Virus record (IMG/VR): IMGVR_UViG_3300046660_000488
Coordinates: 310,001 to 374,000 of that record
Direction: 5' to 3' (one strand)
DNA: 64,000 nucleotides
Shown here: positions 3,514-55,021 of the stretch, one piece after another
Numbering within the stretch: position 1 is the first letter of the stretch
Layout of the letters: each line of letters begins with the position of its first letter
Notes under the pieces: generated by a model
The model's input: the letters and a program-made list of their open reading frames with translations, nothing else
Told to the model about the DNA's origin: nothing
The model's database searches: none
Translations under genes and position numbers: made by a program

Positions 3514-3520
3514 TATTTAT
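3514..3520 (-). promoter_or_regulatory. late promoter motif ATAAATA
   Basis: T4-like TATAAATA core; 5 nt before ATG 3508. Confidence 0.65.
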
Positions 3521-3588
3521 GGTTGATTTTCGTTGACCAAAAACTCGCAGCACGCCTATGGTGCAGGCTTCAGTTACCGGATCACGCC

Positions 3589-4152
3589 ATGCCCTCGTTC
3601 ACCGTCATGCACGCTCATCAGAAGGTCAGCGAGAGCGAGGACTACGTGTTTTTCCTCAACGGCCCGTTGAGCCAATGGCACAAGTCCACGTTCCAGCAGC
3701 GGCTGATCTACAACGGCGAACTCTTCACGTTCAGCCACGCCGAGCAGTACATGATGGCGGGCAAGGCTGTCCTGTTCGACGACTACGAAACGCTGGAAGA
3801 CATCCTGAAGGCCAAGACCCCGGACGAGCAGAAGGCGCTCGGCAAGAAAGTCAAGAATTTCAACCAGACCAAGTGGGATTCCAACGCCCGCAAGATCGTC
3901 CTGCGCGGCAATCTGGCCAAGTTCAGCCAGAACGAAGACCTCAAGCACTACCTGCTGTCGTTCGACCGCAACAAGCGCTTCGTCGAGGGCGCGTGGTACG
4001 ATCCGGTCTGGGGCGTCAAGCTGGCGTGGGACAACCCGCTGATCCTCAACCCGGCCAACTGGCAGGGGACGAACTGGCTGGGCGGTGTGCACGACATCGT
4101 CCGCCAAATCCTGATCCATGATCCGTCGCTGGACCTGATGTCGGATGCGTGA
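3589..4152 (+). CDS. NADAR family (YbiA-like) protein
   Basis: AEQYMMAGKAVLFDD, QKALGKKVKNF, FVEG..YDPVWG, GTNWLG motifs; start chosen at MPSFTV. Confidence 0.88.
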   Translation: MPSFTVMHAHQKVSESEDYVFFLNGPLSQWHKSTFQQRLIYNGELFTFSHAEQYMMAGKAVLFDDYETLEDILKAKTPDEQKALGKKVKNFNQTKWDSNARKIVLRGNLAKFSQNEDLKHYLLSFDRNKRFVEGAWYDPVWGVKLAWDNPLILNPANWQGTNWLGGVHDIVRQILIHDPSLDLMSDA

Positions 4153-5170
4153 GCCCTTCATCTTGCATGGCAAGGAAGTCGTGCCCGGCCAGACGCTGAA
4201 GGTCATCCGCGACCAGATCAACTTCGCACACTGGGCACATGCCGAAGGCTATCCGGTCGTCGGCATGCTGTGCACGGTCGCCGAAGAGCAGGACTTGATC
4301 GACACGCACATTCACATGCGGTTCAAGGCCACCGACATCGGTTATCCGGACCGTGAAGACGATGACGACCGCACGGTCGGCCGCAATTTGGAGCGCGCCT
4401 CACTGGGACTGCCGGGCGACCCGGTGGAACCCGAGCTTTTCATCGATCCGATCCCGATCACCAAAGAGCTTCGGCCGATTGACCGGCTCATCCGGCCGCT
4501 CCTGCTGCGCTATCCGTCGCTCTATCGCAAGCGCATTGAAGTGCTGTTCAGCATTTTCCTGTCGAGCGGTTTCGAGTGGAAAGACGGCGTCATCGTCCCC
4601 GACCGTTACGACCTGACCAAGCATCCGTTCGACCGTGGCCTGCACATCAATCCGCTGCGGTACATGAAAGAATTCGACACGGTCTACACGTCGCAAATGC
4701 TGCACGTGGACCAGCCGACAGACCATGGCGATCTTACTGAAGGCGTGCGGCAACTTTACGTCAAGATGGCGGAAGACCGGGCCAAGGAACTTGAACGGAA
4801 GCTGGCCGAAGACTTGGAACGGTCCAGCCGAATCGACGAGATTTGCAGCACGTGCATCCCCGGCGACACGCTGAATCGTCTCGAACACTCCGTCGTGGCC
4901 TACATGGTCCACAGCAACATGATCAGCATGTTCAGCAAAGGCGTCCTCTGGGACATGCCGGTTGAAGTAGAGCAATCCTGCTACGACGCTGCGTGCGAGT
5001 TCATGGATGCGATGGTCAACAGCCATGATTTCCTCGCCTATCCGAAATCAATACCGATTGAGAAATTCAACAATACACACATCAATGAAATCGCGATGTG
5101 TTGGAATGATTTCCATCGGTCGCGCAAGCCCAGTGAAGGGAAGTACTGGAGCGATATCCCGTACATCTAA
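4145..5170 (+). CDS. hypothetical protein
   Basis: 341 aa ORF overlapping NADAR stop. Confidence 0.65.
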   Translation: MREPFILHGKEVVPGQTLKVIRDQINFAHWAHAEGYPVVGMLCTVAEEQDLIDTHIHMRFKATDIGYPDREDDDDRTVGRNLERASLGLPGDPVEPELFIDPIPITKELRPIDRLIRPLLLRYPSLYRKRIEVLFSIFLSSGFEWKDGVIVPDRYDLTKHPFDRGLHINPLRYMKEFDTVYTSQMLHVDQPTDHGDLTEGVRQLYVKMAEDRAKELERKLAEDLERSSRIDEICSTCIPGDTLNRLEHSVVAYMVHSNMISMFSKGVLWDMPVEVEQSCYDAACEFMDAMVNSHDFLAYPKSIPIEKFNNTHINEIAMCWNDFHRSRKPSEGKYWSDIPYI

Positions 5171-5183
5171 TCGGCACAGCCTC

Positions 5184-5205
5184 TTTACATGGGTAACCAT
5201 GTAAA
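5184..5205. repeat. perfect AT-rich inverted repeat
   Basis: TTTACATGG-GTAA-CCATGTAAA; no U-tract after it on either strand, so operator or weak terminator. Confidence 0.4.
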
Positions 5206-5282
5206 AGAAAAATCCGTTTGCCGTGCGTAATCTGGTGCACTAAAGTGCTCGCAGACAGTTCGCGCGTACTCGGAGAGCAACC

Positions 5283-5567
5283 TTGCCCAAGGCGTACTAC
5301 CACGTTGAGCAACACCCCGGCGTGATTGTGCTCACGGACCTGAACGGGTCTCAGAGCATCACCAACGACGCCGAAGCGGTGATTGTTGACCTCTCCACGA
5401 AATACGATCTCGTCAAGAACCGGGTGATCTACCGTGACTCGATGGGCCGTTACGACGGTCTGGCCGTCAAGGGCAACCGCTTCGTCGGTTTCATCCACAT
5501 CGGCCTCGACGACAAGCACAAAGCGATCATGGCTGCGGCCAGCCGCGAGCGGTGGCCCGACCGATGA
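5283..5567 (+). CDS. phage hypothetical protein
   Basis: GGAG RBS, TTG start; SITNDAE and RVIYRDS motifs. Confidence 0.65.
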   Translation: MPKAYYHVEQHPGVIVLTDLNGSQSITNDAEAVIVDLSTKYDLVKNRVIYRDSMGRYDGLAVKGNRFVGFIHIGLDDKHKAIMAAASRERWPDR

Positions 5568-7508: not shown

Positions 7509-7509
7509 T

Positions 7510-11127: not shown

Positions 11128-12275
11128 GAATCCTATCCGGCGTCCAGCCCACCGGCAACCTGCACCTTGGCAACTATCTCGGCGCCATCAAGCAGTTCGC
11201 CAAGCTCCAGCAGCCCGGCAACAAGTGCTTCTACAGCGTGGTCGATCTACATGCGATCACCGCTGGCAAGCACGATCCGAACGTGCTGGCCCAGCACACC
11301 CGCGAGATCGCGGCGGCGTACATCGCCTCGGGTGTGGACCCCAACCGCTCGACGATCTTCGTCCAGTCACAGGTTCCGGAAATCGCCGAGCTTCACTGGC
11401 TGCTGTGCAACGTCGCGCGCATGGGCTGGCTGGAACGGATGACGCAGTATCGGGAGAAGACCAACAGCGTCCCTCCCGCTGACCTGCGTGGCATCCTCAG
11501 CCGCGTCGAGAAAGTGCTGAAGGGATCGGGGAGCTACAACCTCGAACCGCTGGAAGGCAATGCCGGGACCGTCTTCAACCACAATGACGTGCTGGCCATG
11601 TACGACATGCTGTCGCGCGTCACCTCCAACAAGGAGGGCGCGAGCGTCGGTCTGTTCACCTATCCGGTGCTGATGGCCGCCGACATCCTGTCGGTCGGCG
11701 CCACGCACGTTCCGGTCGGTCATGACCAACGCCAGCACCTGAACTTGGCTCGCGACATCATCGAGAAGCTGAACACCGACTTCCTGATGGTCCGTGACAT
11801 CCCCGAAGCGCTGCACGTCGCCGAAGGCGCGCGCGTCATGTCGCTGAAGGATGGCACGCGCAAGATGTCCAAGAGCGATGCCGACGACGCTGGCCGGATC
11901 AACATGACCGACAGCGACGAGGTGATCGCCAAGAAGGTCCGCAAGGCGACGGCCGACAGCCTGCCGTTCCCTGAGCACGACGTTGACCTGAAGCCGGAAG
12001 TGGCCAACCTGATCTCGATCTATGCTGGGGTCTCTGGGCTGGCGCGTGAGGCGATCTTCGCCGAATTCGCTGGCAAGGGCTGGGGCGTGTTCAAACCGGC
12101 CCTGACGGACGTCCTGATCACCAACATCGGTCCGATCCGCAACCAGATGGAACGGCTGCTCAAGGACGAAGGCTTCCTCGACTATCTGCTCGGCGAAGGC
12201 GCGATGAAAGCGCGGGAAGAAGCCGCGCGCACCTTGGGCATGACCAAGCACATGATGGGCTTCTACGGTGCTTGA
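11124..12275 (+). CDS. trpS: tryptophanyl-tRNA synthetase
   Basis: MRILSGVQPTGNLHLGNYLG, YPVLMAADIL, VPVGHDQ, KMSKS. Confidence 0.95.
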   Translation: MRILSGVQPTGNLHLGNYLGAIKQFAKLQQPGNKCFYSVVDLHAITAGKHDPNVLAQHTREIAAAYIASGVDPNRSTIFVQSQVPEIAELHWLLCNVARMGWLERMTQYREKTNSVPPADLRGILSRVEKVLKGSGSYNLEPLEGNAGTVFNHNDVLAMYDMLSRVTSNKEGASVGLFTYPVLMAADILSVGATHVPVGHDQRQHLNLARDIIEKLNTDFLMVRDIPEALHVAEGARVMSLKDGTRKMSKSDADDAGRINMTDSDEVIAKKVRKATADSLPFPEHDVDLKPEVANLISIYAGVSGLAREAIFAEFAGKGWGVFKPALTDVLITNIGPIRNQMERLLKDEGFLDYLLGEGAMKAREEAARTLGMTKHMMGFYGA

Positions 12276-16180: not shown

Positions 16181-16416
16181 AGGATCGGCAGGTTCGTCTT
16201 CTCGACAAATTTGATTCTGTCTTCTATGTATCGAATGTAACGCTTGCGCTCTTCGTGACTTAGAGACCACGCTTCATCACGAGTGAGACCGCCACGCATG
16301 TGCCAACTCAGCGTAATGACGTGGTCAATCAGTTCCCTCTGTTGAGCGCGAAAGCTCCTGATCAACCGCTGAATATCGTTCGGGTCTGTTAGGCTCAGGA
16401 GCCTTGCTCGAAAAAA
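16177..16416 (-). CDS. gp51-like baseplate/tail assembly chaperone; may be translated as a frameshift extension of the upstream gene
   Basis: LSWHMRGGLTRDEAWSLSHEER...LPIL; no ATG between the upstream stop and the motif. Confidence 0.6.
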   Translation of the reverse strand, partial: FFRARLLSLTDPNDIQRLIRSFRAQQRELIDHVITLSWHMRGGLTRDEAWSLSHEERKRYIRYIEDRIKFVEKTNLPIL

Positions 16417-17522
16417 GTTGACGGGTTGAACTCGATCTCGGTTTCCCATTCGTGCTGGCAAGCCGTGCACGCCACGTGGATAGCCTTGTCGATGCCCTTG
16501 GTGTTGATCTCGCGCAGCTTGGCTTCGAGCTTGGAGGTCATTGACCGGCCGACGTTCTGGATGAAGCGGCCAATGGCCCCACGATCCGTCACGGTGGCTT
16601 CCGGGGTAACCAGCGCCACGATAGCCCCGATCATCGCGTTGGATTGCAGCGACGACAGGCGACGGAACGCGCGGTTACGAGCAGCAGAAATCTGAACCTC
16701 GTCGCCGGATGCTTCCGCGATCTGTAGGGATCGACCTTCCTCGTAGCTGGTCAGCGTGATGGTCGTCACCGTCTCCAGCGTATAGGGCTTGACATAGGCG
16801 GTAAGGCCCGGAGCCAGTTCGACCGGGTTCTGCTGATCTACATAGGTCATCGAGCCCATGACGGACGGCAGGTGGCACTCGAACGTGTGCTCGGCGCCGC
16901 AGGACGGGCAAGCAACCTCGATCTCCATGTTGTCGCCATACGATGCGGCGCGGATGGCCAGCAGCAGGACGTCAAGGTCCGGGCTCGACACGGCGCGCGG
17001 GTTTCGGATCGCCGGGACGCACGACTTCAGAAGTTCCTCGATAGCGTATCCGCTCATCAGGGCGTCGGGGTTCTTCATCAGAAGCTCGTCCTGAGCCCGC
17101 ATCGGGAAGATCGGCACTTCGTGGTTCAGGGCCGGGTTGTAGTCCCGTTGATCGAAGAACGCGCCACGGGTCGGGAGCATCACCGTCAGGCCGGGCACGC
17201 GATAGAAGCGCGCCAGCGGGTCGATGGCCGCCTGTTGAGCCTGATCCAGCGCGGCCAGTGCTTCAGCCGGAGACGTGAAGGGCTGCTCGCCGAACGCTGG
17301 GAACGACGGCGGAGCGCCCATGCCCGGAGGCGGAGCGAACGCTTGGGGCGCGGGCTGCGTGAACTCGGTCCGATGCTGCGGTTGCGGCTGTTGGACCTGT
17401 TGCGGACGCGGCGGCGGGATGTGAGGCGCGGCCGGGCGCTGCATGGCTTGGAACGGATGGGGCGGCGGAAGATCACCGTCACCGTAGTTCTCGTTGAATT
17501 CGTCGTCGGGGAATTGCGTCAT
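16395..17522 (-). CDS. T4 gp26-like baseplate hub assembly protein with Pro/Gln-rich N-terminus
   Basis: LARFYRVP...LPTRG...PIFPMRAQDELLMKNPDALMSG...SCVP; CPSC and CTAC pairs. Confidence 0.75.
   Translation of the reverse strand: MTQFPDDEFNENYGDGDLPPPHPFQAMQRPAAPHIPPPRPQQVQQPQPQHRTEFTQPAPQAFAPPPGMGAPPSFPAFGEQPFTSPAEALAALDQAQQAAIDPLARFYRVPGLTVMLPTRGAFFDQRDYNPALNHEVPIFPMRAQDELLMKNPDALMSGYAIEELLKSCVPAIRNPRAVSSPDLDVLLLAIRAASYGDNMEIEVACPSCGAEHTFECHLPSVMGSMTYVDQQNPVELAPGLTAYVKPYTLETVTTITLTSYEEGRSLQIAEASGDEVQISAARNRAFRRLSSLQSNAMIGAIVALVTPEATVTDRGAIGRFIQNVGRSMTSKLEAKLREINTKGIDKAIHVACTACQHEWETEIEFNPSTFFEQGS
16410..16416 (-). promoter_or_regulatory. candidate -1 frameshift heptamer T TTT TTC
   Basis: In frame in gp26-like gene; AGGCTC-CT-GAGCCT hairpin starts 5 nt downstream. 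Confidence 0.55.
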
Positions 17523-17557: not shown

Positions 17558-17564
17558 TATTTAG
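17558..17564 (-). promoter_or_regulatory. late promoter motif CTAAATA
   Basis: Upstream of gp26-like gene. Confidence 0.6.
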
Positions 17565-17595
17565 AGAGGCAGAAAAGTCAGCAGTTAAATGGGCC

Positions 17596-17602
17596 ATAAA
17601 TA
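17596..17602 (+). promoter_or_regulatory. late promoter motif ATAAATA
   Basis: Upstream of tape measure gene. Confidence 0.65.
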
Positions 17603-20356: not shown

Positions 20357-20363
20357 CTAAATA
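20357..20363 (+). promoter_or_regulatory. late promoter motif CTAAATA
   Basis: Upstream of portal. Confidence 0.65.
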
Positions 20364-22684: not shown

Positions 22685-22691
22685 CTAAATA
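22685..22691 (+). promoter_or_regulatory. late promoter motif CTAAATA
   Basis: Upstream of acidic core protein. Confidence 0.65.
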
Positions 22692-23806: not shown

Positions 23807-23813
23807 ATAAATA
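23807..23813 (+). promoter_or_regulatory. late promoter motif ATAAATA
   Basis: Upstream of prohead protease. Confidence 0.65.
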
Positions 23814-24609: not shown

Positions 24610-24616
24610 ATAAATA
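24610..24616 (+). promoter_or_regulatory. late promoter motif ATAAATA
   Basis: Upstream of scaffold-capsid operon. Confidence 0.65.
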
Positions 24617-27312: not shown

Positions 27313-27319
27313 CTAAATA
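27313..27319 (+). promoter_or_regulatory. late promoter motif CTAAATA
   Basis: Upstream of 27348 gene. Confidence 0.6.
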
Positions 27320-35453: not shown

Positions 35454-35558
35454 AATAGTCTCCAGTATGGCTTCAACTATGAAAGTAGAGTTTGGTGCGA
35501 TTTCTCGCTGTCCATCATCTTCTTCACAATATCAGCTTCGACTTTCCTACCGCAATAT

Positions 35559-40453: not shown

Positions 40454-40460
40454 TATTTAT
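40454..40460 (-). promoter_or_regulatory. late promoter motif ATAAATA
   Basis: Upstream of 40397 start. Confidence 0.55.
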
Positions 40461-40466
40461 GATCGG

Positions 40467-40825: not shown

Positions 40826-42829
40826 TTAATGATCGTTCATATACACCAGAGCGAGGCCGCCGCCTGATGTGCCCGGCCGGGTTCCCGTGTTCAGGGACGT
40901 GACCGCACTTGGGGCCTGAACCGGCGGCTCGTTGTAAAGTGTCGCGCCGACTTGCAGAGAGCTACCGCCGGTGTTGAACCGCGCCAACACGGTGGTTCCA
41001 TTATACGTCCCGGTAAAACTTCCACCCACTCCGTAACTGGCATAGGCCACGGGCGGATAACTTGTGGAGTCCGAATAATTGATGGTGCTGTTGTACGGCC
41101 GCGTTGATCCATAACCGTAGAGCATCACCGTGGGCAAAAGCTCTGCGAATGTGGTCGAGGCATGGCTGATCGGGCAACCGGCGGCTCCGAACGATCCGCT
41201 GGAAGCACCCGAACCGACCCGCAGTTCCTTGCCATCATTTACGCCGCCGTTGACGCGGAACGCCAAACGAGGGGCTGTGACGTTGGCGACCTGATCGGGG
41301 GCCGCGTTGAAGTTGGTCTGCACGAGGCTGAACGAGGTTTCATCACCAAGGCATTGGTAATCCCAGACCGCAGTTTCGCCATAGGATTGCGGACCGCCCT
41401 TCGAATCATCCGACCAGTACGCACCAACTGCGGACGCCGTGCCCGCGAGGTGGACCCGCAACGTCCCAGCGTAACCCTGACCGGGGATCGTGACCGTGGT
41501 CGCAATGGACGATTGGGGAGCAGCCGCCGTCTGGACGTAAGGAACGTTCTGGCTGAGACCTCCAGCATAGACTGCCACGGGTGTCGGTCCGGTGAGTGTG
41601 ACATAGCCCGTATAACCCGCTGCGATGAACTGGTTGGCCGAGTATTTCCGCAGGAAGGGAACGGACACACCGGTGGTTCCCAGCGGGTTGAAATCGACCG
41701 GGCCGTAGGATACCGGCGACCCTTGTTGCGCGTAGGTCTGGTCGATCCAGCGGAAGTACCGGACGTCAACGGCGGTGGTGACCGCGAGATCAGATTGTAG
41801 AGCGACAATGCTCTTGATGTTAGCCACACCAACCGTCGCGACTTGCGACCACGACGAGCCGTTGTAGCGGAAGATGTAGACCGTCGTCCGCAGGTGGTTC
41901 AGGGCGAAGAAATGGGTTCCGTCCGGCGAGAAGACACCTTGGATGAAATGCCGATTGTTCGTTTCAAGGTAGAACGCCTGCACGCTCGCGCCCGTTGCTC
42001 CGCTCAATGTGCTGATGGCCACCACGGCGTGGTTGTCACCGTCGCCATTTCCGAACGCGGCGATGTGTTGCTTGGTCGGTGAGACCACGCAAGCGAACTG
42101 GTTGTTGTTTCCAAAACCGGCTTCACCACCATCCGGATCGTACGGCCAGCCGCTGAAGCTGGTCATCGTATACTGAGTGTAGGGCGTCGCCCCTGTCGCT
42201 GAATACAGGAACCGATTACTCGGGCCTGAAATGTATTTCTCATCGTCCGTGACCGACAAATTGACCGGAGATTCCGCGCCACTCATTAGGTACAGCGGCA
42301 ACGAGCCAATCGAGACGCGCGAGCTATAGTTTGGCGATCCGTTCGCATTGGTGTCAAAGCGCCAGACCGTGCCGCCGGAGTCGAGCAAGTAAACTCGCGT
42401 ACCCGTCGTATTGAACGTGATCGCACGGAAATATCCCGTGCCCCAGCCGGATGACGTATCGGCGTACGATCCTGACCCGGAGCCGTCTTCCTTAGCGGTT
42501 TGGAGGTAACCAATCGTGTCCTGAGCAACCGTACCGGAATAGACCCAGCCGTTGGAATTGCGGACGATCACTGCCGAGTACGGTGATCCCGTGGCGGACA
42601 GGCGAGTCGTCAGGTCGTAATAAGTACCAGACCCGGTGTCAGCGGCGTTCGACGCACCGTAGAAATGGTGGAAGCTGAGCGGGCCTGATGTGGGGATGCC
42701 TTGATTTGCTACGGTATCGGGAACAAACGGCCCGCCGCGATAATAATTCGAAAGCTTGATCGGCGCCGAGCCGCCGAATTCGGCCACCAAGTCGCTGAAG
42801 CTGATTTTGCCGTTTGTGGGAAGAGCCAT
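40826..42829 (-). CDS. gp38-like adhesin / receptor-binding virion protein
   Basis: N-terminal LP..G.ISFSDLVAEFGG..P..LSNYYRGG..VP adhesin-type head, then beta-propeller-like repeats. Confidence 0.65.
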   Translation of the reverse strand: MALPTNGKISFSDLVAEFGGSAPIKLSNYYRGGPFVPDTVANQGIPTSGPLSFHHFYGASNAADTGSGTYYDLTTRLSATGSPYSAVIVRNSNGWVYSGTVAQDTIGYLQTAKEDGSGSGSYADTSSGWGTGYFRAITFNTTGTRVYLLDSGGTVWRFDTNANGSPNYSSRVSIGSLPLYLMSGAESPVNLSVTDDEKYISGPSNRFLYSATGATPYTQYTMTSFSGWPYDPDGGEAGFGNNNQFACVVSPTKQHIAAFGNGDGDNHAVVAISTLSGATGASVQAFYLETNNRHFIQGVFSPDGTHFFALNHLRTTVYIFRYNGSSWSQVATVGVANIKSIVALQSDLAVTTAVDVRYFRWIDQTYAQQGSPVSYGPVDFNPLGTTGVSVPFLRKYSANQFIAAGYTGYVTLTGPTPVAVYAGGLSQNVPYVQTAAAPQSSIATTVTIPGQGYAGTLRVHLAGTASAVGAYWSDDSKGGPQSYGETAVWDYQCLGDETSFSLVQTNFNAAPDQVANVTAPRLAFRVNGGVNDGKELRVGSGASSGSFGAAGCPISHASTTFAELLPTVMLYGYGSTRPYNSTINYSDSTSYPPVAYASYGVGGSFTGTYNGTTVLARFNTGGSSLQVGATLYNEPPVQAPSAVTSLNTGTRPGTSGGGLALVYMNDH

Positions 42830-42833: not shown

Positions 42834-42840
42834 TATTTAT
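42834..42840 (-). promoter_or_regulatory. late promoter motif ATAAATA
   Basis: 4 nt before ATG 42829. Confidence 0.65.
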
Positions 42841-43291: not shown

Positions 43292-43559
43292 GAAGAGCCT
43301 CAGCACCTACCATTTCACGGTCAACGGCAGTCCCGAGAAAGTCTGCGATCTGAAATCCACTATCTATGACGAGGCAGTCGCGGCGATCCCTGCAATGCTG
43401 AGTGAGCCAGAGAAGCAGTATCCGCTCGAAATCACGATCTGGGTTCCGGACCTTCTTCCCGACTATGGGCCGTATGATTACTACATCGAAAAGCCGGGTG
43501 GTGCTGTCGCCATTGCTGTGACCCGGCCGGATGGAACAAAGATGGCCATCTACACTTGA
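43284..43559 (+). CDS. hypothetical protein
   Basis: Overlaps HNH stop. Confidence 0.55.
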   Translation: MSKKSLSTYHFTVNGSPEKVCDLKSTIYDEAVAAIPAMLSEPEKQYPLEITIWVPDLLPDYGPYDYYIEKPGGAVAIAVTRPDGTKMAIYT

Positions 43560-43583
43560 CTTGGGTCGTATCTCCAGTATAAT
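43556..43583 (+). promoter_or_regulatory. sigma70-like promoter
   Basis: TTGACT-N16-TATAAT. Confidence 0.75.
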
Positions 43584-43619
43584 GGGAGCTTCTATTCAAC
43601 CCTCAATGAGGAGGCGGCC

Positions 43620-44276
43620 ATGCTGGACTACTCGATCCTGCACAAATATCCGCATACGCCGCACCTGCCTCAGTCGCGGTCGCGGACCGATGACGACCGG
43701 GTTCTGACCAAGACCACGCACCTTCTGGGCATGGACGTCGTGATGTCGGAGAAGATGGATGGCGAGAACGCCTCCCTCTACAACCATCACATCCACGCCC
43801 GGTCGCTGGACTCGCGTCCTCGCCCTGATCAGGACTGGGTTCGCCGGTTCTGGTCCAACCGACGCGCCGACATTCCGGCCAAGTGGCGGGTCTGCGGCGA
43901 GAACCTGTGGGCCAAGCACTCGATCATCTACGACAACCTCCCGAGCTACTTCCTTGGGTTCTCCATCTGGAATGACGAGAACGTCACGCTGGGTTGGGAC
44001 GAAACGCTGGAGTGGTTCAAGCTGCTGGACATCATCCCGGTTCGCGAACTCTATCGCGGCCCGTACTCGGATGACGTGGTCCTCGACCTCATCAGCAAGA
44101 TGAACCCGGACAAGCAAGAAGGGTTTGTCGTCCGCAACATCAACTCGTTCTCGCATGACGATTTCGAGTTGAATGCGGCCAAGTACGTTCGGCCCAAGCA
44201 CGTGCAGACCGATCAGCACTGGCTACACGGCGCCATCACGCCAAACGGGCTCGCCCCGGACGGCCAGCAACAGTAA
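43620..44276 (+). CDS. ATP-dependent RNA ligase family protein (short Rnl2-like)
   Basis: KYPHTPHLP, EKMDGEN (motif I), CGEN, EGFVVR, AKYVR. Confidence 0.85.
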   Translation: MLDYSILHKYPHTPHLPQSRSRTDDDRVLTKTTHLLGMDVVMSEKMDGENASLYNHHIHARSLDSRPRPDQDWVRRFWSNRRADIPAKWRVCGENLWAKHSIIYDNLPSYFLGFSIWNDENVTLGWDETLEWFKLLDIIPVRELYRGPYSDDVVLDLISKMNPDKQEGFVVRNINSFSHDDFELNAAKYVRPKHVQTDQHWLHGAITPNGLAPDGQQQ

Positions 44277-46367: not shown

Positions 46368-46394
46368 GACAGTCTGAGCAGGGCATAGCCCTAT

Positions 46395-47735
46395 TTACTT
46401 GGTCTCTTCGACGTAGGCGCCGTGCAGCGCGTCGGTGAACAGGGTTTCGAAATCGATGCCCTCGGGGATGCCGCCAGCGACCACCAGAGTGGGGCTGATG
46501 GACGACAGAAGCTCTTGTGCCGCTTCGATCACTTCGTCGCGGGTCACCGACCGGTAGCGGTCGAGCAGGACTTGGTCCGACTCCGCCTCGCCCTTGGCGA
46601 ACAGTTGGGTGGCGACCGAGTCCGTCACATAGTCCGGGTTACGGTTCTGGGACAGTTGCTGGAGGATGATCTGGTTGCGCGAGCGCGTCCAGTCGGCTTC
46701 GGTGACTTCGCCCTGCGCGATGCGAACCAGTTCGCTGATCGCCGTCTTCAGAAATTCGACGACGTTGCCGGTCGAGGCCGAACCCTTGATGACGAAGAGC
46801 GACAGGTCTGCGTTGCGGAGCAGGCCCGAGCCCACCGAATAACAGAGAGCCTTGCGCTCGCGGGTGTTCTGGAACAGCGGTGAGGACATGCCGCCGCCCA
46901 GCACGTTGGCCAACATGGCGTACTTGGTCAGCGACAGGTCAATCGAGCCCGGCGCCGGGAAGGCGACGTACATGTGCGATTGCTCGAAGCGGTCGTCCTC
47001 GTGGATGGTCACGCCGCCGACGTACTGGGCCGGTTCGATGGCGACGGCCGGAGCGCGCTCCAGATGGCCGAAGTACTTCTCGCCCATGGCGACCAGAGCG
47101 TCGTGGTCCACGTCACCGGCCGCGATCAGCAGCATGTGCTCCGGGTGGTAGAAAGTCTTGACGTAGTTGAACAGGTCGTCCTGCGTGAACGACATGACAT
47201 TTTCGGACGTGCCAAGGATTTCGCGGCCCAGCGGAGTGTTGCCGTAGGCCGTCAGGTCCAACTGGGCGCGGGCGATGTGCGAAATCTTGTCGCCGTACTC
47301 GGCGATCTCTTCGCAGACCACGCCCTTCTCGCGCTCGATCTCGTCCATCGGGAAGGTGGCGTGACAGACGATGTCGGCGAGGATTTCCACCGACTTCTCC
47401 ATGTGCTCGCTCAGGCCCTCGACCAGATAAGAAGTGGCGGCCTTGCCGGTGGCGGCATTCACGTAGCCGCCGAGCACTTCGATCTGTTCGGCGATTTCCT
47501 TGACGTTCCGGTGCTTCGTGCCCTTGAACAGCACGTGCTCCAGATAGTGGGTGATCCCGTTCAACTCGCTGGTCTCGTTGCGAGCGCCGACCTTCGTGTA
47601 GACCGTGACCTGAACCTCGCCCGGCGTGGGACGCACGGCGCTGACCACGCGCAACCCGTTCGGGAGCGTGGTGATGGTGACGCCTTCCTTGGCGGAGACG
47701 ATGGTGTCGGGTGCGGTCTGGGTCAGGTTGGTCAA
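46395..47735 (-). CDS. M16 family (pitrilysin/MPP-like) zinc peptidase
   Basis: TLPNGLRV, HYLEH inverted zinc motif, NAATG, EREKGVVCEEI, LGGGMSSPLFQ; TTG start after AGGAG. Confidence 0.92.
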   Translation of the reverse strand: MTNLTQTAPDTIVSAKEGVTITTLPNGLRVVSAVRPTPGEVQVTVYTKVGARNETSELNGITHYLEHVLFKGTKHRNVKEIAEQIEVLGGYVNAATGKAATSYLVEGLSEHMEKSVEILADIVCHATFPMDEIEREKGVVCEEIAEYGDKISHIARAQLDLTAYGNTPLGREILGTSENVMSFTQDDLFNYVKTFYHPEHMLLIAAGDVDHDALVAMGEKYFGHLERAPAVAIEPAQYVGGVTIHEDDRFEQSHMYVAFPAPGSIDLSLTKYAMLANVLGGGMSSPLFQNTRERKALCYSVGSGLLRNADLSLFVIKGSASTGNVVEFLKTAISELVRIAQGEVTEADWTRSRNQIILQQLSQNRNPDYVTDSVATQLFAKGEAESDQVLLDRYRSVTRDEVIEAAQELLSSISPTLVVAGGIPEGIDFETLFTDALHGAYVEETK

Positions 47736-47868
47736 AGGAACTCCTTGAAACTGAAAGAGCACGGTAGACTGAAAACACGATCTCGTCAACCAGTTTTACT
47801 CTGTGCTGTATAGATTTCTCTCAGAATAGCAGAGAGAAACGCCAAAACCAATTTCCACGTTTGGCCGC

Positions 47869-47875
47869 CTAAATA
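47869..47875 (+). promoter_or_regulatory. late promoter motif CTAAATA
   Basis: 4 nt before ATG 47880. Confidence 0.65.
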
Positions 47876-47879: not shown

Positions 47880-48494
47880 ATGGCCAACGAAATCGACATC
47901 GAAAAGATTCAGGAATCACCGCACCTTCTGGACATGCTGCTCCAGATGGAAGACGTGCTTGATTCGCTGGACATCTACGTTTTCAAGAACTGGTACAAGG
48001 GCGAGGTGGTCGAAGGACCCGGCGTGCGTCGGTATTGGCTCGATTTCACGCTGAAGTACAAGCACAACCAGATGCCCGATCCCAAGGCCGCCATGCGGTT
48101 GATCAAGCACGGCATCCGCGTTGACTTCTCCAAGGGTACGGAGAAATCCAAGGAATACAACGCCAACTACGATCAGACGGTTCACGACGACACTGTTCCA
48201 GTGCAGAAGGGCGACGCCCCGCCGGAAGAGAAAGACGTTCGCCCCGAGGACACGGTTTGGCTGGTGGCCATCAGCATCCCGCGTCGCCTCGTTGCTGAAC
48301 TGTCGGCCGAGCAGATCGACAACGAATACGACGACGAAGTCGATATCGAGGACGTCGATGACGCCATGGATACCGGCATCGACGACGAGAGCGAGGTCAT
48401 GGCTGACGAGAACGGCGCGTCCGCTGACGGCGCGGCTGATCCGATGGCCGACATGGGCGGCGCGCCTCCGCCTCAGCAGGGAGCGCCCCAATGA
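47880..48494 (+). CDS. phage protein with acidic C-terminus
   Basis: LDIYVFKNWYKGEVVEGP..RRYW; late motif. Confidence 0.75.
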   Translation: MANEIDIEKIQESPHLLDMLLQMEDVLDSLDIYVFKNWYKGEVVEGPGVRRYWLDFTLKYKHNQMPDPKAAMRLIKHGIRVDFSKGTEKSKEYNANYDQTVHDDTVPVQKGDAPPEEKDVRPEDTVWLVAISIPRRLVAELSAEQIDNEYDDEVDIEDVDDAMDTGIDDESEVMADENGASADGAADPMADMGGAPPPQQGAPQ

Positions 48495-49697: not shown

Positions 49698-49747
49698 CCC
49701 ACACAACTAGAAGAGTAATATACATCCACCTACACAGAGAGCCCTCG

Positions 49748-49754
49748 CTAAATA
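49748..49754 (+). promoter_or_regulatory. late promoter motif CTAAATA
   Basis: Upstream of TM-PAS pair. Confidence 0.6.
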
Positions 49755-49809
49755 AAGCCGAGGGCTTTTTTGCGTGGTGGTTGCTGTGGAGGGATTTCTA
49801 GGGTCGTTG

Positions 49810-50052: not shown

Positions 50053-50055
50053 ACT

Positions 50056-51258
50056 ATGATCTGGCCGTTCAATTCCCGTCGCAAAGTGGATGATCGCCGT
50101 GAGCGCGACATTCTCCGCGATCTGCGCGTGTTGGAAAGCCAGCACGCGCTGCTCGAAGCTGCGACGCAAACGGCCGATGCCGCGAATGTGGTCACCAACA
50201 GCCTGCGCGCCCGTCTTCAGGACAGCATTTCGCAGTTCGAGAACACGGCCCGCATCCTGAATGACGCTTTGGTCATCTGTGACCTTGAAGGCAAGGTTCA
50301 GGCGTTCAACCCAGCCGCTGAGCGCATGTTCAATCTCCCGGCTCGTGACGCACGCGATGCCTTCGTCGGCGACCTGCTGGAATGGGGCGACACCGCGCTG
50401 ACGGACATCGAGTACGTTTGGGAGCTACTGAGCCGCCTCGAAAAGGAAGACGACGACGGCGCCACCCTCAAAGGTGTAGCGTCTAATGGCCGCACCTTCC
50501 CCATCGACGTCAACCACACGCGCTTGGATCGCTCGGACAACTCGGCCATCGTCCTGCTGGTCATCCGCGACATCACGCCATGCGCTGACATCAAGGTCTC
50601 ACTGAAGAGCTACCGGTCGATCTTCGACTCGGCGTTCGACTGCATCCTCGTCATCGACAACGACGACATCGTCGCCGCCAACCCGGTCGCCTCGGAATTC
50701 TTCGGCTACAGCGCAGAAGAGCTTCTAAGCAAGCGTCTGGACGATCTGATCGTCACTGGCCGCCACGACCTCTCCAAGGCCTTCAGCACCGGTGACGACG
50801 CCGTGGACCTGAAAGGCAAGATCGCCGATCACGACGGTCACCAGATGGAAGTCACGTTCACCACCACCACGATCTGGTGGAACGGACGCCCGGCCGCACT
50901 GGTAACGATCAAGGACACCACGAGCGTGTACGTGCGCGCGCCGCAGATCGAGAACTTGATCTGCTGCTTCAACGACAAATTCAAGATCACCTTCGTGAAC
51001 GCGGCCTTCGCCTCGTTCTACGGTCTTGGGCGCGACAAACTGGTTGGGTCGGACATCCGCGCCCTACAGCCGGAGAACGACCGCAGCGCCTTCCTGATGC
51101 ACCTGAACGGGCTGACGCCACAAACGCCGAGCCGCCGCATGCAGCTTCGCACACGCGATCATGACGGCGCCATCTGCACGCAAGTGTGGACTGACAACGC
51201 GACCTTCGACGACGATGGCGTCGAGTATCAGCGTATCGGCCACGTCACCCGCGATTAA
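50056..51258 (+). CDS. coiled-coil plus three PAS domains, no output domain
   Basis: FNPAAERMF..IRDIT, ANPVASEFFGYS..IKDTT, VNAAFASFYG..VTRD; stop directly after third PAS. Confidence 0.88.
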   Translation: MIWPFNSRRKVDDRRERDILRDLRVLESQHALLEAATQTADAANVVTNSLRARLQDSISQFENTARILNDALVICDLEGKVQAFNPAAERMFNLPARDARDAFVGDLLEWGDTALTDIEYVWELLSRLEKEDDDGATLKGVASNGRTFPIDVNHTRLDRSDNSAIVLLVIRDITPCADIKVSLKSYRSIFDSAFDCILVIDNDDIVAANPVASEFFGYSAEELLSKRLDDLIVTGRHDLSKAFSTGDDAVDLKGKIADHDGHQMEVTFTTTTIWWNGRPAALVTIKDTTSVYVRAPQIENLICCFNDKFKITFVNAAFASFYGLGRDKLVGSDIRALQPENDRSAFLMHLNGLTPQTPSRRMQLRTRDHDGAICTQVWTDNATFDDDGVEYQRIGHVTRD

Positions 51259-51881: not shown

Positions 51882-51884
51882 GGG

Positions 51885-53089: not shown

Positions 53090-53093
53090 ATTA

Positions 53094-54323
53094 TCACGCA
53101 TACGGGGCGTTGAGATAGGCCGCATGATCCTGAGCCTCGACAATCAGGGACGGCAGGTAGTTGTCCTTGCAGAATTTCAGGAAATGGACCCCGACGCCCT
53201 GCACCTTGGGCTTTTGGACAGCCTCGAACACAACCTCCGTCATCAGGTTCTTGATCCGGTCGGGCATCTGGGTGAGGTCGATCAGCGATTCGTTGATCTT
53301 GAACTCGGAACCCACCGTAACCTTTTCCTTGATCGGATCGCCGGTCTGCGGATCGAAACCGACGATCTTGTCCCACTCCGTCTGGAAGAAATTGTTCCAG
53401 ACGTAGTCCTTGGTCTTGCGGTCTTCCCAAGCTTCGCAGATGCCCGCGCGCTTGGATGACCCCTTGTAGAAGACGCCGGGGTAGGACGAGAACACGCTGT
53501 CGCCGACGTCGCCACGGATCAGCTTCACGAACAGGGCCTTACGCCACCATTCGGGCTCGATGGTGAACGAGAATTCTTCCCGAACAAACGGCTCCGGAAC
53601 ATACGCCACCGGCTCATACGACGGCTTCTTGACCTGTTTCTTCGCTTCGGCCGCGTCGTGGCGCTCGCGTTTCTTGACTTGTTTTTCGCGGTGCTTGATC
53701 TGCCGCTCGTCTTCCGCAAGCTCGTGCTTGGTGCGGGCTTCGGCGAACGTGCCCTTGATCGACACCTTGCCGCTGTCGGGCTTGATCGCGAACACCAGTT
53801 GTTCACCGGTCTCGACGCGGAACACGCCGTCCGTGGTCAGCAGGGTGTCGTCGAGGCCGTTGTAGATTTTGACCTTGGGGGACAGCAACTGCACGAAGTC
53901 GCTGTCGCTCGACAGGATGATGTGCTCGTCGTCCGGGTGTAGGGCGATCCAGTGCGCGATCCAGTCGTCGCCTTCCACGCCATCCTTCTGGAGGACGGTG
54001 CAGCGGGTCTTGTCGTTCAGGAATTCCTGAAAGTCGTTCATGACGTGCATGAACGCGGCTTCCTCTTCCTTTTCGGCCGGGGTCGCCTCCATCTTGTCCA
54101 GCTTCCGCTTGGACTTGTACTTGGGGTAGATGTCGTAGCGCCAGCTACGGCCTTCGCAGGTGAAGACGAAGTGATCCGTCTTGAACTCGCGGTGCAGCTT
54201 CCGCAGCGAGCGGAAGATGATGGTCAGAGCCAGACCCGCCTTCGTGAAGGCGTCGCCCTGTGCGGCGTGGCGGGCGCGATAAAACAGGTTTGCGACATCA
54301 ACAATCGCGTAGCGTCTGGACAT
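53094..54323 (-). CDS. rnh: T4-type RNase H (FEN-like 5'-3' exonuclease)
   Basis: IVDVANL, EGRSWR, EGDDWI, SSDSDFVQL, RGDVGD. Confidence 0.88.
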   Translation of the reverse strand: MSRRYAIVDVANLFYRARHAAQGDAFTKAGLALTIIFRSLRKLHREFKTDHFVFTCEGRSWRYDIYPKYKSKRKLDKMEATPAEKEEEAAFMHVMNDFQEFLNDKTRCTVLQKDGVEGDDWIAHWIALHPDDEHIILSSDSDFVQLLSPKVKIYNGLDDTLLTTDGVFRVETGEQLVFAIKPDSGKVSIKGTFAEARTKHELAEDERQIKHREKQVKKRERHDAAEAKKQVKKPSYEPVAYVPEPFVREEFSFTIEPEWWRKALFVKLIRGDVGDSVFSSYPGVFYKGSSKRAGICEAWEDRKTKDYVWNNFFQTEWDKIVGFDPQTGDPIKEKVTVGSEFKINESLIDLTQMPDRIKNLMTEVVFEAVQKPKVQGVGVHFLKFCKDNYLPSLIVEAQDHAAYLNAPYA

Positions 54324-54393
54324 GAATGGCCTCAAATAATGACCCCCATCTTAGGAGCCAATTAGAAGCCTGTCAAATTTTGGTTAACCAGAT

Positions 54394-54621
54394 TTAGGCC
54401 GCGAGTTTGGCCGCCTGCTGCGCGCTGATCTGGTCGTAGAATTTCGACCGCCAGTCGCCCCAGTCGCCGAAACAGCCGATGCTGATCATCACGTGTTCGG
54501 GGACGATTTCTGTGTCGAGCACGAGCGCGCTGATGCGGCGCCCGAACAGGTAGGTTTCCCTGACCAGCTTCTGAACGTTGTCGCCCGGCTTGCGAGTGAC
54601 CCTATCCTTGATCGTGATCAT
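54394..54621 (-). CDS. hypothetical protein
   Basis: 75 aa. Confidence 0.55.
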   Translation of the reverse strand: MITIKDRVTRKPGDNVQKLVRETYLFGRRISALVLDTEIVPEHVMISIGCFGDWGDWRSKFYDQISAQQAAKLAA

Positions 54622-54650
54622 AAAAAATCCCCTCTGTGGAGCAGAGGGGG
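54622..54650 (-). terminator. intrinsic terminator
   Basis: CCCCTCTG/CAGAGGGG stem with minus-strand T run. Confidence 0.65.
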
Positions 54651-54675
54651 ACTTTAGAGCAAGTTCAGGGAGAAA

Positions 54676-55008
54676 TCAAGCCTTGAGTTTGAACTGAATG
54701 GCAACCACAGAATCAGAGGCTGCTTCGATGCTGTAGCTTTCACCGAGGCCAGAGCTAAACAGCTTCAGGAGAATGGCGAACGGAATACCTTCAGCGGGGA
54801 CGAACACCGCGACGCTCACGCTGCCATTTTCGATGTAGACCGCATTGCGGCGAGCGAATTCGAGGCCCAGACGTTCGAAAACTTCCTTCGTCTTTGCCTC
54901 GATCTGTTGGTCGCGCATGGCCTCAGCTTCGGACGCTTCCGGGTCGTAGCCGTATTCGTCTGGTTCTTCGTTGATACCAGCCAATTCGATGATGCGAGAG
55001 TGATCCAT
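54676..55008 (-). CDS. probable virion internal protein
   Basis: N-terminus MDHSRIIELAGINEE; GTAAATA 6 nt upstream. Confidence 0.6.
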   Translation of the reverse strand: MDHSRIIELAGINEEPDEYGYDPEASEAEAMRDQQIEAKTKEVFERLGLEFARRNAVYIENGSVSVAVFVPAEGIPFAILLKLFSSGLGESYSIEAASDSVVAIQFKLKA

Positions 55009-55014
55009 GGGTAC

Positions 55015-55021
55015 TATTTAC
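55015..55021 (-). promoter_or_regulatory. late promoter motif GTAAATA
   Basis: 6 nt before ATG 55008. Confidence 0.55.

What the first reader, a model, noticed from the sequence alone, without database searches (positions are those of the whole stretch)
3514..55021. Late promoter motif so close to start codons that several late mRNAs look leaderless
Seen: about 21 copies of (A/C/G)TAAATA, nearly all intergenic and pointing into genes, including every head gene. In four cases only 4-6 nt separate motif and ATG with no room for a Shine-Dalgarno: 3514-3520 (5 nt), 42834-42840 (4 nt), 47869-47875 (4 nt), 55015-55021 (6 nt). Known: T4 late transcription starts a few nt after TATAAATA, and Caulobacter translates leaderless mRNA well. 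Inference: a leaderless late class enriched in virion passenger proteins, possibly resistant to SD-dependent shut-off.
Basis: partly seen in the sequence, partly recalled or inferred. Interest (0 to 1): 0.6.

Follow-up and report, generated by a model that had tools for sequence, protein, structure and literature searches.

The report
Leaderless late genes in a megaphage
In this 578-kb T4-related soil phage, a T4-like late promoter box sits 4-6 bases before the ATG of 54 genes (four in the window), so their mRNAs should begin at the start codon with no ribosome-binding leader, and about half encode proteins tagged for packaging into the phage head.

Summary
The window has 24 VTAAATA copies against 2.5 expected. 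The 578,292-bp phage genome has 180 TAAATA, almost all pointing into genes, and only 5 are preceded by T.

Genome-wide, 54 copies have an ATG opening an ORF of at least 50 codons exactly 4 nt (15), 5 nt (34) or 6 nt (5) downstream. About 3 are expected (P~1e-47). GTG or TTG almost never occupies these positions, and only 1 of 54 has an SD core.

T4's box spans -13 to -6, so a 5-nt gap puts +1 on the A of ATG. A gp55-like late sigma gene lies 8 kb upstream of the window.

Homologue alignments confirm the start codon for three of the four window cases. The fourth (55015) is ambiguous.

Uncultured relatives show the same layout, with 100, 51 and 44 copies per record against 0-6 in controls. T4 and the closest cultured relative (Sinorhizobium phage Phosso) do not.

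About half of the leaderless genes encode unrelated proteins that share an N-terminal MRxxΦΦxE peptide resembling T4's capsid-targeting sequence. These include ADP-ribosyltransferases.

No RNA data exist, so the 5' ends are inferred. Resistance to shut-off is untested.

The parts
3514..3520 (-). ATAAATA late-promoter box, 5 nt before the ATG at 3508
   Evidence: the upstream in-frame extension to the GTG at 3553 has a negative coding score
2600..3508 (-). Leaderless candidate A: a 302-aa ART-like protein. It starts MRANEILSEA (capsid-targeting-like peptide), and the catalytic domain follows from about residue 20 (LYRGD).
   Evidence: Weak ART-PolyVal/DUF3990 hits. 243 homologues, some embedded in polyvalent proteins of 1200-3700 aa. 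Same-length homologues start with the same kind of peptide, one reading MKTFAEFVVVE.
42834..42840 (-). ATAAATA box, 4 nt before the ATG at 42829
40826..42829 (-). Leaderless candidate B: a 667-aa tail-fibre-like protein whose N-terminus MALPTNG... is conserved from residue 1
   Evidence: M1, L3, P4 and G7 are invariant in 6 homologues, three of which carry PF05268
47869..47875 (+). CTAAATA box, 4 nt before the ATG at 47880; the upstream neighbour (M16 peptidase) is divergent
   Evidence: The orthologous box is at 5 nt in L004 and 4 nt in L005, but 18-24 nt in L006 and L007.
47880..48494 (+). Leaderless candidate C: a 204-aa virion structural protein (phrog_12928)
   Evidence: Of 22 aligned homologues, 19 start within one residue of this Met; three gene calls extend 1 to about 30 residues upstream.
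55015..55021 (-). GTAAATA box, 6 nt before the ATG at 55008. This is the weakest case: it has the rare G variant and a rare spacing. A same-strand upstream gene ends 15 nt before the ATG, and an AAGGG lies about 12 nt upstream.
54676..55008 (-). Candidate D: a 110-aa orphan protein starting MDHSRIIELAG
   Evidence: No homologues found; it has a hydrophobic-x-E near the N-terminus
20357..20363 (+). Leadered late promoter for the portal gene (30-nt leader, no SD core)
22685..22691 (+). Leadered late promoter (50-nt leader, SD aagggaga) for the 333-aa head-module protein 22742-23743, which starts MRSILEQ
23807..23813 (+). Leadered late promoter (49 nt, SD) for the prohead protease gp21 homologue 23863-24501
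24610..24616 (+). Late promoter upstream of the scaffold gene (24717/24741-25988) and probably of the major capsid gene 26004-27215
17558..17602 (.). Back-to-back divergent late promoters. 17558-17564(-) faces the baseplate gene 16395-17522. 17596-17602(+) faces the 905-aa virion protein 17630-20347.
27313..27319 (+). Leadered late promoter (28 nt, SD gggag) for 27348-28529
61220..61226 (-). Motif copy 29 nt before the DNA polymerase ATG (61190), just after a terminator hairpin. It shows that the box is not confined to virion genes.

Best explanation
VTAAATA is the -10-type box of this phage's T4-like late promoters. It is read by host RNA polymerase carrying the phage's gp55-like sigma and needs no -35 element.

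About 60% of the promoter-like copies lie 20-100 nt upstream of a start codon and give ordinary leadered mRNAs, many with an SD. The other roughly 40% (54 genes, four of them in the window) sit so that 4-6 nt, mostly 5, separate the box from an ATG. By T4 geometry, transcription should then start on or next to the A of that ATG. The mRNA would have no 5' leader and no SD, and would be translated by the leaderless route, in which the ribosome recognises a 5'-terminal AUG.

The class consists of virion proteins: tail fibre, baseplate wedge, giant structural proteins. It also includes about 24 otherwise unrelated proteins that share an N-terminal peptide M-R-x-x-(E/I)-(I/L)-(I/L)-x-E. I infer that this peptide is a capsid-targeting and protease-cleavage tag like the one on T4's internal proteins. 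The tagged enzymes (ADP-ribosyltransferases, a cell-wall hydrolase, an acetyltransferase) would then be loaded into the head and injected.

Shown: the motif statistics, spacing, orientation, ATG exclusivity, start-codon positions, presence of the sigma gene, and conservation across related genomes.
Inferred: the actual 5' ends, the late timing, and the packaging and cleavage of the tagged proteins.
For: - Enrichment and orientation: 24 vs 2.5 copies in the window. The genome has 175 V-TAAATA vs 5 T-TAAATA. 138 of 180 copies face a gene within 100 nt, and 1 lies in an opposite-strand gene.
- Spacing: ATG with an ORF of at least 50 codons at 4/5/6 nt in 15/34/5 cases. GTG plus TTG total 3 there. 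A second broad mode lies at 23-35 nt. Expected 3.1, P~9e-48.
- Geometry: in T4 the box spans -13 to -6 (PMC2988020), so a 5-nt gap gives +1 = A. The base before the A is C in 26 of 34 cases in the 5-nt class.
- No alternative starts: an SD core occurs at 1 of 54 leaderless starts. Upstream extensions are non-coding in 17 of 19 cases. Codons 2-21 score as coding in 50 of 54. Downstream starts with an SD occur in 8 of 54, which is the chance rate.
- Window start codons: verified by homologues.
- Gene context: 24 of 54 have a divergent upstream neighbour, including pairs with 27-nt and 49-nt intergenic regions made of little more than two boxes.
- Sigma factor: gp55-like gene at genome 301206-302186 (phrog_12791 E 2.9e-80; T4 gp55 E 3e-6).
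- No -35 conservation in either class.
- Relatives: VTAAATA-N4-5-ATG occurs 100, 51, 44 and 9 times in related IMG/VR records, against controls of 0, 6, 0 and 1.
- Function: PHROG virion, tail and baseplate hits; ART-PolyVal, Hydrolase_2 and GNAT.
- Tag: 24 of about 34 proteins with the tag-like N-terminus are leaderless (odds ratio 54, P 2e-22). Hydrophobic-x-E is present in 23 of 25, against 14% of all genes. T4's tag is MKTYQEFIAE (PMC8442874).
Against: - No RNA data exist for this phage, so no 5' end has been seen.
- gp33 and gp45 homologues were not detected.
- The box also precedes the DNA polymerase gene. With a TTGAC -35 element it precedes tRNA clusters. So 'late-only' is not shown, and host sigma-70 might read some copies.
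- 7 of 54 boxes supply the stop codon of an upstream same-strand gene, and 5 more lie within 8 nt of one. Reinitiation could contribute at those sites, and at window case D.
- The T4 capsid-targeting sequence itself scores negative on the profile built from this phage's tags.
- The spacer between the box and +1 is G+C-rich here, whereas it is A+T-rich in T4.
Confidence: 0.72

Rival explanations
1. The box is a real promoter and the mRNAs are leaderless, but host sigma-70-type holoenzyme reads it as a -10-only or extended -10 promoter rather than the gp55-like factor. The class would then not be specifically late.
For: VTAAAT resembles an alphaproteobacterial -10, with a rhizobial consensus of CTATAT (from memory). 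About 12 copies have TTGAC 17-18 nt upstream and drive tRNA clusters. A copy precedes the DNA polymerase gene. gp33 and gp45 were not found.
Against: The promoters with a -35 element tolerate varied -10 hexamers (TATAAT, CTATAT, TATACT). The -35-less class is invariant TAAATA with a conserved final A, as in T4. A gp55 homologue is present. The genes served are mostly virion genes. Phosso uses the same box before its head and tail genes.
Confidence: 0.13
2. The transcripts are not leaderless. They start further upstream or are polycistronic, and UAAAUA 4-5 nt before the AUG acts on the RNA as an A/U-rich, SD-independent ribosome-loading or reinitiation signal.
For: 30 of 54 have a same-strand upstream gene. 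In 7 of these the motif's TAA is that gene's stop codon, and 5 more lie within 8 nt. Window case D fits this layout. Many leadered genes of this phage lack an SD: the SD core is found at only 31-47% of starts.
Against: 24 of 54 have a divergent neighbour and tiny intergenic regions, so no upstream transcript from the same unit is available. The same heptamer sits 23-35 nt upstream of SD-bearing genes, where it cannot act as a ribosome site. The spacing matches promoter geometry to the nucleotide, and C-A at -1/+1 fits a start site. Strict ATG use is typical of leaderless initiation.
Confidence: 0.1
3. The counts are inflated by duplication of one promoter-plus-tag cassette, so the pattern is a paralogy artefact with no functional meaning for spacing.
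For: 25 of 54 begin with ATG CGN and share the MR peptide.
Against: All-against-all BLAST finds only three small homology groups among the 54 proteins. 29 leaderless genes lack the MR tag and are unrelated structural genes. The flanks of the box are not conserved. Orthologues switch between leaderless and leadered layouts in relatives.
Confidence: 0.03

Closest known systems
Bacteriophage T4 late promoters (TATAAATA, gp55/gp33/gp45)
   Same: The core TAAATA box lies at -11 to -6. There is no -35 element, a gp55-family sigma is encoded, and the box serves head, baseplate and tail genes.
   Different: Positions -13/-12 read N-V (C>A>G, almost never T) instead of T-A. The spacer to +1 is G+C-rich. 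gp33 and gp45 were not detected. T4 has no excess of boxes 4-6 nt from an ATG (1 vs 2 and 6 vs 9 in controls), whereas this phage has 54.
Thermus phage phiYS40 leaderless middle/late transcripts
   Same: It is a large phage whose middle and late mRNAs mostly lack a leader and therefore an SD (PMC3594737; the original paper, Sevostyanova 2007, is not held).
   Different: phiYS40 is not T4-like. It uses host sigma-A-type -10 elements (from memory) in a host phylum where leaderless expression is already common (PMC12340547). It is reported to shift IF2 and IF3 levels. Here the promoter is gp55-type, and only about 40% of the boxes are leaderless.
Promoter -10 box adjacent to ORFs in Deinococcus-Thermus and Actinobacteria; lambda cI from PRM
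   Same: A -10 element lies a fixed 5-7 nt before the start codon and produces a 5'-terminal AUG (PMC12340547; PMC10491246).
   Different: Those are cellular or sigma-70 promoters. Here a phage-specific late sigma box is used, and the layout is tied to virion and cargo genes.
T4 capsid targeting sequence (MKTYQEFIAE) of internal proteins IPI-III and Alt
   Same: A short N-terminal peptide shared by otherwise unrelated proteins. It has a basic residue at position 2 and a hydrophobic pair followed by Glu, which is the gp21 cleavage type. A gp21 protease homologue is present. The cargo includes ADP-ribosyltransferases, as Alt is in T4. One homologue of window protein A starts MKTFAEFVVVE.
   Different: The consensus is MRxx(E/I)(I/L)(I/L)xE, one residue shorter, and T4's tag scores negative on its profile. 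About 34 tagged genes are present, against a handful in T4. Packaging and cleavage have not been shown.
Sinorhizobium phage Phosso (469 kb), Agrobacterium phage Atu_ph07, Rak2-like jumbo phages
   Same: They are the closest cultured relatives by major capsid protein (77%, 65% and about 63% identity). Phosso has the same VTAAATA box before its head and tail genes.
   Different: In Phosso the box sits 20-40 nt upstream with SD leaders. VTAAATA-N4-5-ATG occurs once, and the control also gives 1. The leaderless layout is therefore derived in the uncultured clade of roughly 0.5-0.58 Mb with 57-59% G+C.

Membership tests
T4-type (gp55-dependent) late promoter | A gp55-family late sigma factor is encoded by the phage | tested here: met
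   Genome 301206-302186(+): phrog_12791 E 2.9e-80 and phrog_234 E 1.5e-20; T4 gp55 matches at E 3e-6
T4-type (gp55-dependent) late promoter | A TATAAATA-like box at the -10 position with no conserved -35 element | tested here: met
   TAAATA is invariant and no column upstream is conserved. The two 5' positions differ from T4 (V instead of A at -12).
T4-type (gp55-dependent) late promoter | Serves virion structural genes | tested here: met
   Portal, protease, scaffold, baseplate, tail and virion proteins. It also precedes the DNA polymerase gene and tRNA clusters.
T4-type (gp55-dependent) late promoter | The gp33 co-activator and the gp45 sliding clamp are present | tested here: inconclusive
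   No match to T4 gp45, gp33 or Pfam PF02916. The gp44 clamp-loader homologue is present at window 35559-36497, so the clamp may simply be too divergent to detect.
T4-type (gp55-dependent) late promoter | Transcription starts about 6 nt after the box, late in infection and coupled to replication | not testable with these tools
   No RNA runs hold this sequence
Leaderless mRNA | The primary 5' end lies on or within a few nt of the start codon | not testable with these tools
   Inferred from box-to-ATG spacing and T4 numbering only
Leaderless mRNA | AUG start codon and no SD | tested here: met
   54 ATG vs 3 GTG/TTG at offsets 4-6; SD core at 1 of 54
Leaderless mRNA | The ATG next to the promoter is the real N-terminus | tested here: met
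   Window genes A, B and C by homologue N-termini. Genome-wide by coding scores. Gene D could not be tested because it is an orphan.
T4 capsid targeting sequence | A short N-terminal peptide shared by unrelated proteins and ending in a prohead-protease site (L/I-x-E) | tested here: met
   24-25 non-homologous proteins. Hydrophobic-x-E in 23 of 25, against 14% background. gp21-type protease at window 23863-24501.
T4 capsid targeting sequence | Sequence similarity to MKTYQEFIAE | tested here: not met
   T4's tag scores -6.2 on this phage's profile. Only one distant homologue of protein A (MKTFAEFVVVE) resembles it closely. The claim is 'works like', not membership.
T4 capsid targeting sequence | The protein is found in the head, with the tag removed | not testable with these tools
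   Needs virion proteomics

The most novel reading that the evidence does not exclude
A clade of uncultured soil megaphages of roughly 0.5-0.58 Mb has converted a large share of its gp55-type late promoters into promoter-AUG fusions. Between 50 and 100 late genes per genome would then be translated as leaderless mRNAs.

The fused unit (box, 4-5 nt, ATG, capsid-targeting tag) would work as a portable cassette. It would turn any captured gene into a late-expressed, head-packaged, injected effector.

The phage's own bS21, which carries the same box, would retune ribosomes late in infection toward these SD-less messages.
Probability: 0.25. Interest if true: 0.8.

Novelty: new variant of a known kind. 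Interest (0 to 1): 0.62.

Why it matters
T4-type late promoters and leaderless mRNAs are each textbook. A systematic fusion of the two was not found in four literature searches covering leaderless transcripts with late promoters, late genes or jumbo phages. Here 54 genes in this genome and up to about 100 in a relative have the fusion, while T4 and the nearest cultured relative lack it.

If the 5' ends are confirmed, three things follow:
- It would be a second, independent case, after Thermus phage phiYS40, of a phage moving much of its late programme to SD-independent translation.
- It would give a simple sequence rule for fixing start codons in megaphage annotation.
- It would identify some 34 candidate injected proteins, including several ADP-ribosyltransferases, by a recognisable tag.

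It also offers a testable link between phage-encoded bS21 and the choice between SD-led and leaderless initiation.

Tried and rejected
- Near-identity search of the cultured-phage collection with the 905-aa gene found no match.
- RNA evidence: the only holders of this DNA are two soil/rhizosphere DNA runs kept as contigs. Read laying was therefore not used, since contigs cannot show RNA ends.
- T4 gp45, gp33, gp62, RegA and DsbA, and Pfam PF02916, gave no match in the genome. PHROG scans of ten genes around the clamp loader found no clamp.
- IF3_C and S1 domains were not found.
- IMG/VR scan for CTAAATA-N5-ATGCGCGA returned 88 hits, roughly what a back-of-envelope estimate from collection size gives for 15 specified bases. 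Most belong to unrelated contigs (for example a 'MRENEK...' gene family from one sample). Only a few large contigs were informative.
- Window gene D has no homologues in 5.8 billion proteins or in the related loci, so its start codon could not be verified.
- The T4 capsid-targeting sequence does not score on the profile of this phage's tags.
- The original phiYS40 paper (PMC1885378) is not held, so a review was cited instead.
- Rejected ideas: that true starts are downstream ATGs with an SD, and that the pattern is a paralogue-duplication artefact.
- Host identity could not be established. A Caulobacter host has no support.

Full report
**What the window is**

The window is bases 310001-374000 of a single 578,292-bp contig with 59% G+C. 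The contig is an IMG/VR virus record with direct terminal repeats, rated complete by CheckV. The only sequencing run holding the full stretch is a rhizosphere metagenome.

The window carries T4-type core genes:
- portal gp20 (20394-22193)
- prohead protease gp21 (23863-24501)
- scaffold (24717-25988)
- major capsid protein gp23 (26004-27215)
- a baseplate protein (16395-17522)
- clamp loader gp44 (35559-36497)
- DNA polymerase gp43 (58308-61190)

By capsid protein the nearest cultured phages are Sinorhizobium phage Phosso (77% identity, 469 kb) and Agrobacterium phage Atu_ph07 (65%), followed by Rak2-like jumbo phages. Nothing supports a Caulobacter host.

**Checking the observation**

VTAAATA occurs 24 times in the window, against 2.5 expected from dinucleotide shuffles, which never gave more than 8.

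I built a simple codon-usage gene caller for the whole genome, which called 735 genes. With it I classified all 180 TAAATA copies:
- 54 abut an ATG.
- 84 lie 7-100 nt upstream of a called gene start on the same strand.
- 26 are intergenic without a called gene. Many of these sit before tRNA clusters.
- 15 lie inside same-strand genes, often near a start that my caller placed too far upstream.
- 1 lies inside an opposite-strand gene.

T precedes TAAATA in only 5 of 180 copies. TAAATA is among the two most enriched hexamers upstream of genes.

**The spacing signal**

For each copy I looked for an ATG that opens an ORF of at least 50 codons at every offset from 0 to 40 nt. Offsets 0-8 gave counts of 0, 0, 0, 0, 15, 34, 5, 2, 3. 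Counts then stayed near zero until a broad second mode at 23-35 nt.

GTG and TTG at offsets 4-6 total 3, even though they make up about a third of longest-ORF starts in this genome. With 3.1 hits expected, 54 has a binomial P of about 9e-48. In the 5-nt class the base before the A is C in 26 of 34 cases, which is the usual pyrimidine-purine start-site pair.

The T4 late-transcription review numbers the first T of TATAAATA as -13. The box therefore ends at -6, and +1 is the sixth base after it (PMC2988020). A 5-nt gap places +1 on the A of ATG. Gaps of 4 and 6 nt are within one base of that position.

**Are these ATGs the real starts?**

- Only 1 of 54 has an SD core upstream.
- Where the ORF extends further upstream, the extension scores as non-coding in 17 of 19 cases.
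- Codons 2-21 score as coding in 50 of 54.
- Only 8 of 54 have any in-frame start with an SD in codons 2-40. None of the four window genes is among them. This matches the 6.4% chance rate per candidate codon.

For the four window genes:
- **C (47880-48494):** in an alignment of 22 homologues from other metagenomes, 19 start within one residue of this Met, and invariant residues begin at position 6.
- **B (40826-42829):** it shares an N-terminal domain with gp38-type fibre proteins, with M1, L3, P4 and G7 invariant.
- **A (2600-3508):** it has 243 homologues. Same-length homologues begin with the same kind of short peptide ahead of the LYRGD catalytic core, which begins near residue 20.
- **D (54676-55008):** it is an orphan. 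It also has the rare G variant of the box and the rare 6-nt spacing. A same-strand gene ends 15 nt upstream, and an AAGGG lies about 12 nt upstream. I treat D as ambiguous.

**Promoter or RNA signal?**

24 of the 54 genes have a divergent upstream neighbour. Some divergent pairs leave only 27 or 49 nt between the two ATGs, and those gaps are filled almost entirely by two back-to-back boxes. The transcript must therefore start inside that short gap.

The same heptamer precedes SD-bearing genes at 23-50 nt, including the protease and the 333-aa head protein in the window. At that distance it cannot be a ribosome site.

In 7 of 54 cases the TAA inside the box is the stop codon of an upstream same-strand gene. 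Reinitiation may add to expression at those sites.

**Which polymerase?**

A gp55-family late sigma gene lies 8 kb upstream of the window. Neither the leaderless nor the leadered class shows any -35 conservation.

A separate set of about 29 promoters has TTGAC, a 17-nt spacer and a variable -10 (TATAAT, CTATAT, TATACT or VTAAAT). These sit before tRNA clusters and some early-type genes, for example at window 43556(+) and before the 5'-3' exonuclease gene at 54376(-).

This two-class picture mirrors T4. However, gp33 and gp45 were not found, and a box also precedes the DNA polymerase gene. Strict lateness is therefore inferred, not shown.

**What the leaderless genes encode**

The 29 genes without an MR start include:
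- virion structural proteins: phrog_11591, phrog_14467, phrog_12928, and phrog_10938 twice, one of them 3275 aa
- a gp25-like baseplate wedge protein, tail proteins and a fibre-like protein
- a Dps-like protein and a DNA methyltransferase

The other 25 begin with MR. 24 of them share M-R-x-x-(E/I)-(I/L)-(I/L)-x-E, although BLAST groups only a few of them as homologues. A hydrophobic-x-E with the Glu at residues 7-12 occurs in 23 of 25, against 14% of all genes.

A profile of the peptide finds about 10 more such N-termini. Four of them are second genes abutting or overlapping a leaderless gene, two lie within 70 nt downstream of one, and another lies inside a leaderless ORF. The association between the tag and the leaderless layout has an odds ratio of 54 (P 2e-22).

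Pfam identifies three of the tagged proteins as ART-PolyVal ADP-ribosyltransferases above threshold, with window protein A as a weak fourth. It also finds a SleB-type cell-wall hydrolase and a GNAT acetyltransferase. Homologues of protein A also occur inside polyvalent proteins of 1200-3700 aa.

T4's internal proteins carry the capsid-targeting sequence MKTYQEFIAE, which is removed by the prohead protease (PMC8442874; PMC3012670). The peptide found here has the same position, length and character, and one homologue of protein A starts MKTFAEFVVVE. T4's own tag does not score on this phage's profile. I therefore claim a functional analogy, not membership.

Within the head module, the 333-aa protein at 22742-23743 starts MRSILEQ. 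The capsid protein has KLLE followed by SATAG just before its Gp23 domain, which fits the same protease specificity.

**Relatives**

- The orthologue of gene C keeps the box at 5 nt in L004 and 4 nt in L005. In L006 and L007 it has an 18-24-nt leader. The layout therefore switches during evolution.
- Whole-record counts of VTAAATA-N4-5-ATG in related IMG/VR records are 100 (499,572 bp, control 0), 51 (561,116 bp, control 6), 44 (240,363 bp, control 0) and 9 (149 kb, control 1).
- Phosso gives 1 (control 1) and T4 gives 6 (control 9). For TATAAATA-N4-6-ATG, T4 gives 1 (control 2).
- Phosso does use VTAAATA before its head and tail genes, but with SD leaders of 20-40 nt.

The leaderless layout is thus a derived trait of an uncultured clade with genomes of about 0.5-0.58 Mb and 57-59% G+C.

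**Literature**

Four full-text searches that combined 'leaderless' with late promoters, late genes, jumbo phages or phiYS40 found no description of gp55-type promoters fused to start codons. Known precedents are:
- Thermus phage phiYS40, whose middle and late mRNAs are mostly leaderless (PMC3594737).
- -10 boxes adjacent to ORFs in Deinococcus-Thermus (PMC12340547).
- lambda cI (PMC10491246).

phiKZ showed no leaderless transcripts (PMC8244752).

**Shut-off resistance**

One lead is that the phage encodes ribosomal protein bS21 (55.9 bits). Its gene has a CTAAATA box 73 nt upstream, plus an SD.

bS21 supports the anti-SD region, and ribosomes lacking it translate leaderless lambda cI mRNA better (PMC10491246). 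Phage bS21 has been linked to late-stage replication (title of PMC9723584). Whether this phage's bS21 shifts the balance between SD-led and leaderless initiation is open.

**Verdict**

I rate it a new variant of known kinds, of moderate to high interest.

Noticed in passing
genome G000:C1 about 86665-86895 (-), outside the window (locus L009): The phage encodes a ribosomal protein bS21 homologue (55.9 bits, above the Pfam cut-off). Its gene has a CTAAATA box 73 nt upstream, a hairpin-forming leader and an SD.
   Followed up: partly
whole genome; e.g. 42262-42534, 103933-106732, 132217-133024, 507963-517634: ARAGORN reports 69 genes in a tRNA+tmRNA scan, and every row seen is a tRNA. Two have a CUA anticodon (109999-110155), so they look like amber suppressors. 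The tRNA clusters are preceded by TTGAC-N17-VTAAAT(A) promoters.
   Followed up: partly
window 43556-43590 (+) and 54340-54381 (-); about 29 sites genome-wide: A second promoter class has a TTGAC -35 element, a 17-nt spacer and a variable -10 (TATAAT, CTATAT, TATACT, TAAGAT). In the window it sits before gene 43620-44276 and before the 5'-3' exonuclease gene. These are probably host sigma-70-type early promoters.
   Followed up: partly
window 49735-49775 (+); L004 about 3040-3090, L005 about 11820-11870, L006 about 11880-11930: An intrinsic-terminator hairpin (-20.2 kcal/mol, z -5.1) carries CTAAATAAAG in its loop. The hairpin and the loop motif are conserved in three relatives, with changes in the stem. 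It looks like a terminator and a promoter sharing one site.
   Followed up: partly
window 35556-35562 (-) and 46392-46398 (-): In two GTAAATA copies the TAA is the stop codon of the upstream gene (the clamp loader and the M16 peptidase). Genome-wide, 7 leaderless and 4 leadered boxes do the same.
   Followed up: partly
genome 468385-468413 and 470061-470111: Divergent gene pairs whose two ATGs are only 27 and 49 nt apart. Two back-to-back boxes take up most of that gap (all but the 5-nt spacers in the 27-nt pair). The 93-aa left-hand ORF of the first pair was not called by my gene caller.
   Followed up: partly
window 22742-23743 (+): A 333-aa protein between the portal and protease genes starts MRSILEQ (tag-like) and has a long acidic stretch. 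It may be a prohead core or internal protein. It is expressed from a leadered promoter with a strong SD.
   Followed up: no
window 40454-40502 (-): Two boxes lie in tandem, 35 nt apart. The proximal one is followed at 7 nt by a 5-codon mini-ORF, and the next gene start (40397) is 56 nt downstream.
   Followed up: no
genome 275247-291567 (+): Three consecutive giant virion genes (3275, 1156 and 991 aa) each have their own box 5 nt before the ATG.
   Followed up: partly
IMG/VR loci L051-L130, sample 3300045988: An unrelated group of contigs of about 20-38 kb (58-60% G+C) has a single CTAAATA 5 nt before a gene of about 600 aa starting MRENEKRMEGEK. It may be an independent leaderless gene or a chance match.
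   Followed up: no
window 46395-47789 (-) and 50056-51258 (+): The phage encodes an M16 (insulinase-type) peptidase and a PAS-domain protein. Both are conserved in synteny in relatives L005 and L006.
   Followed up: no
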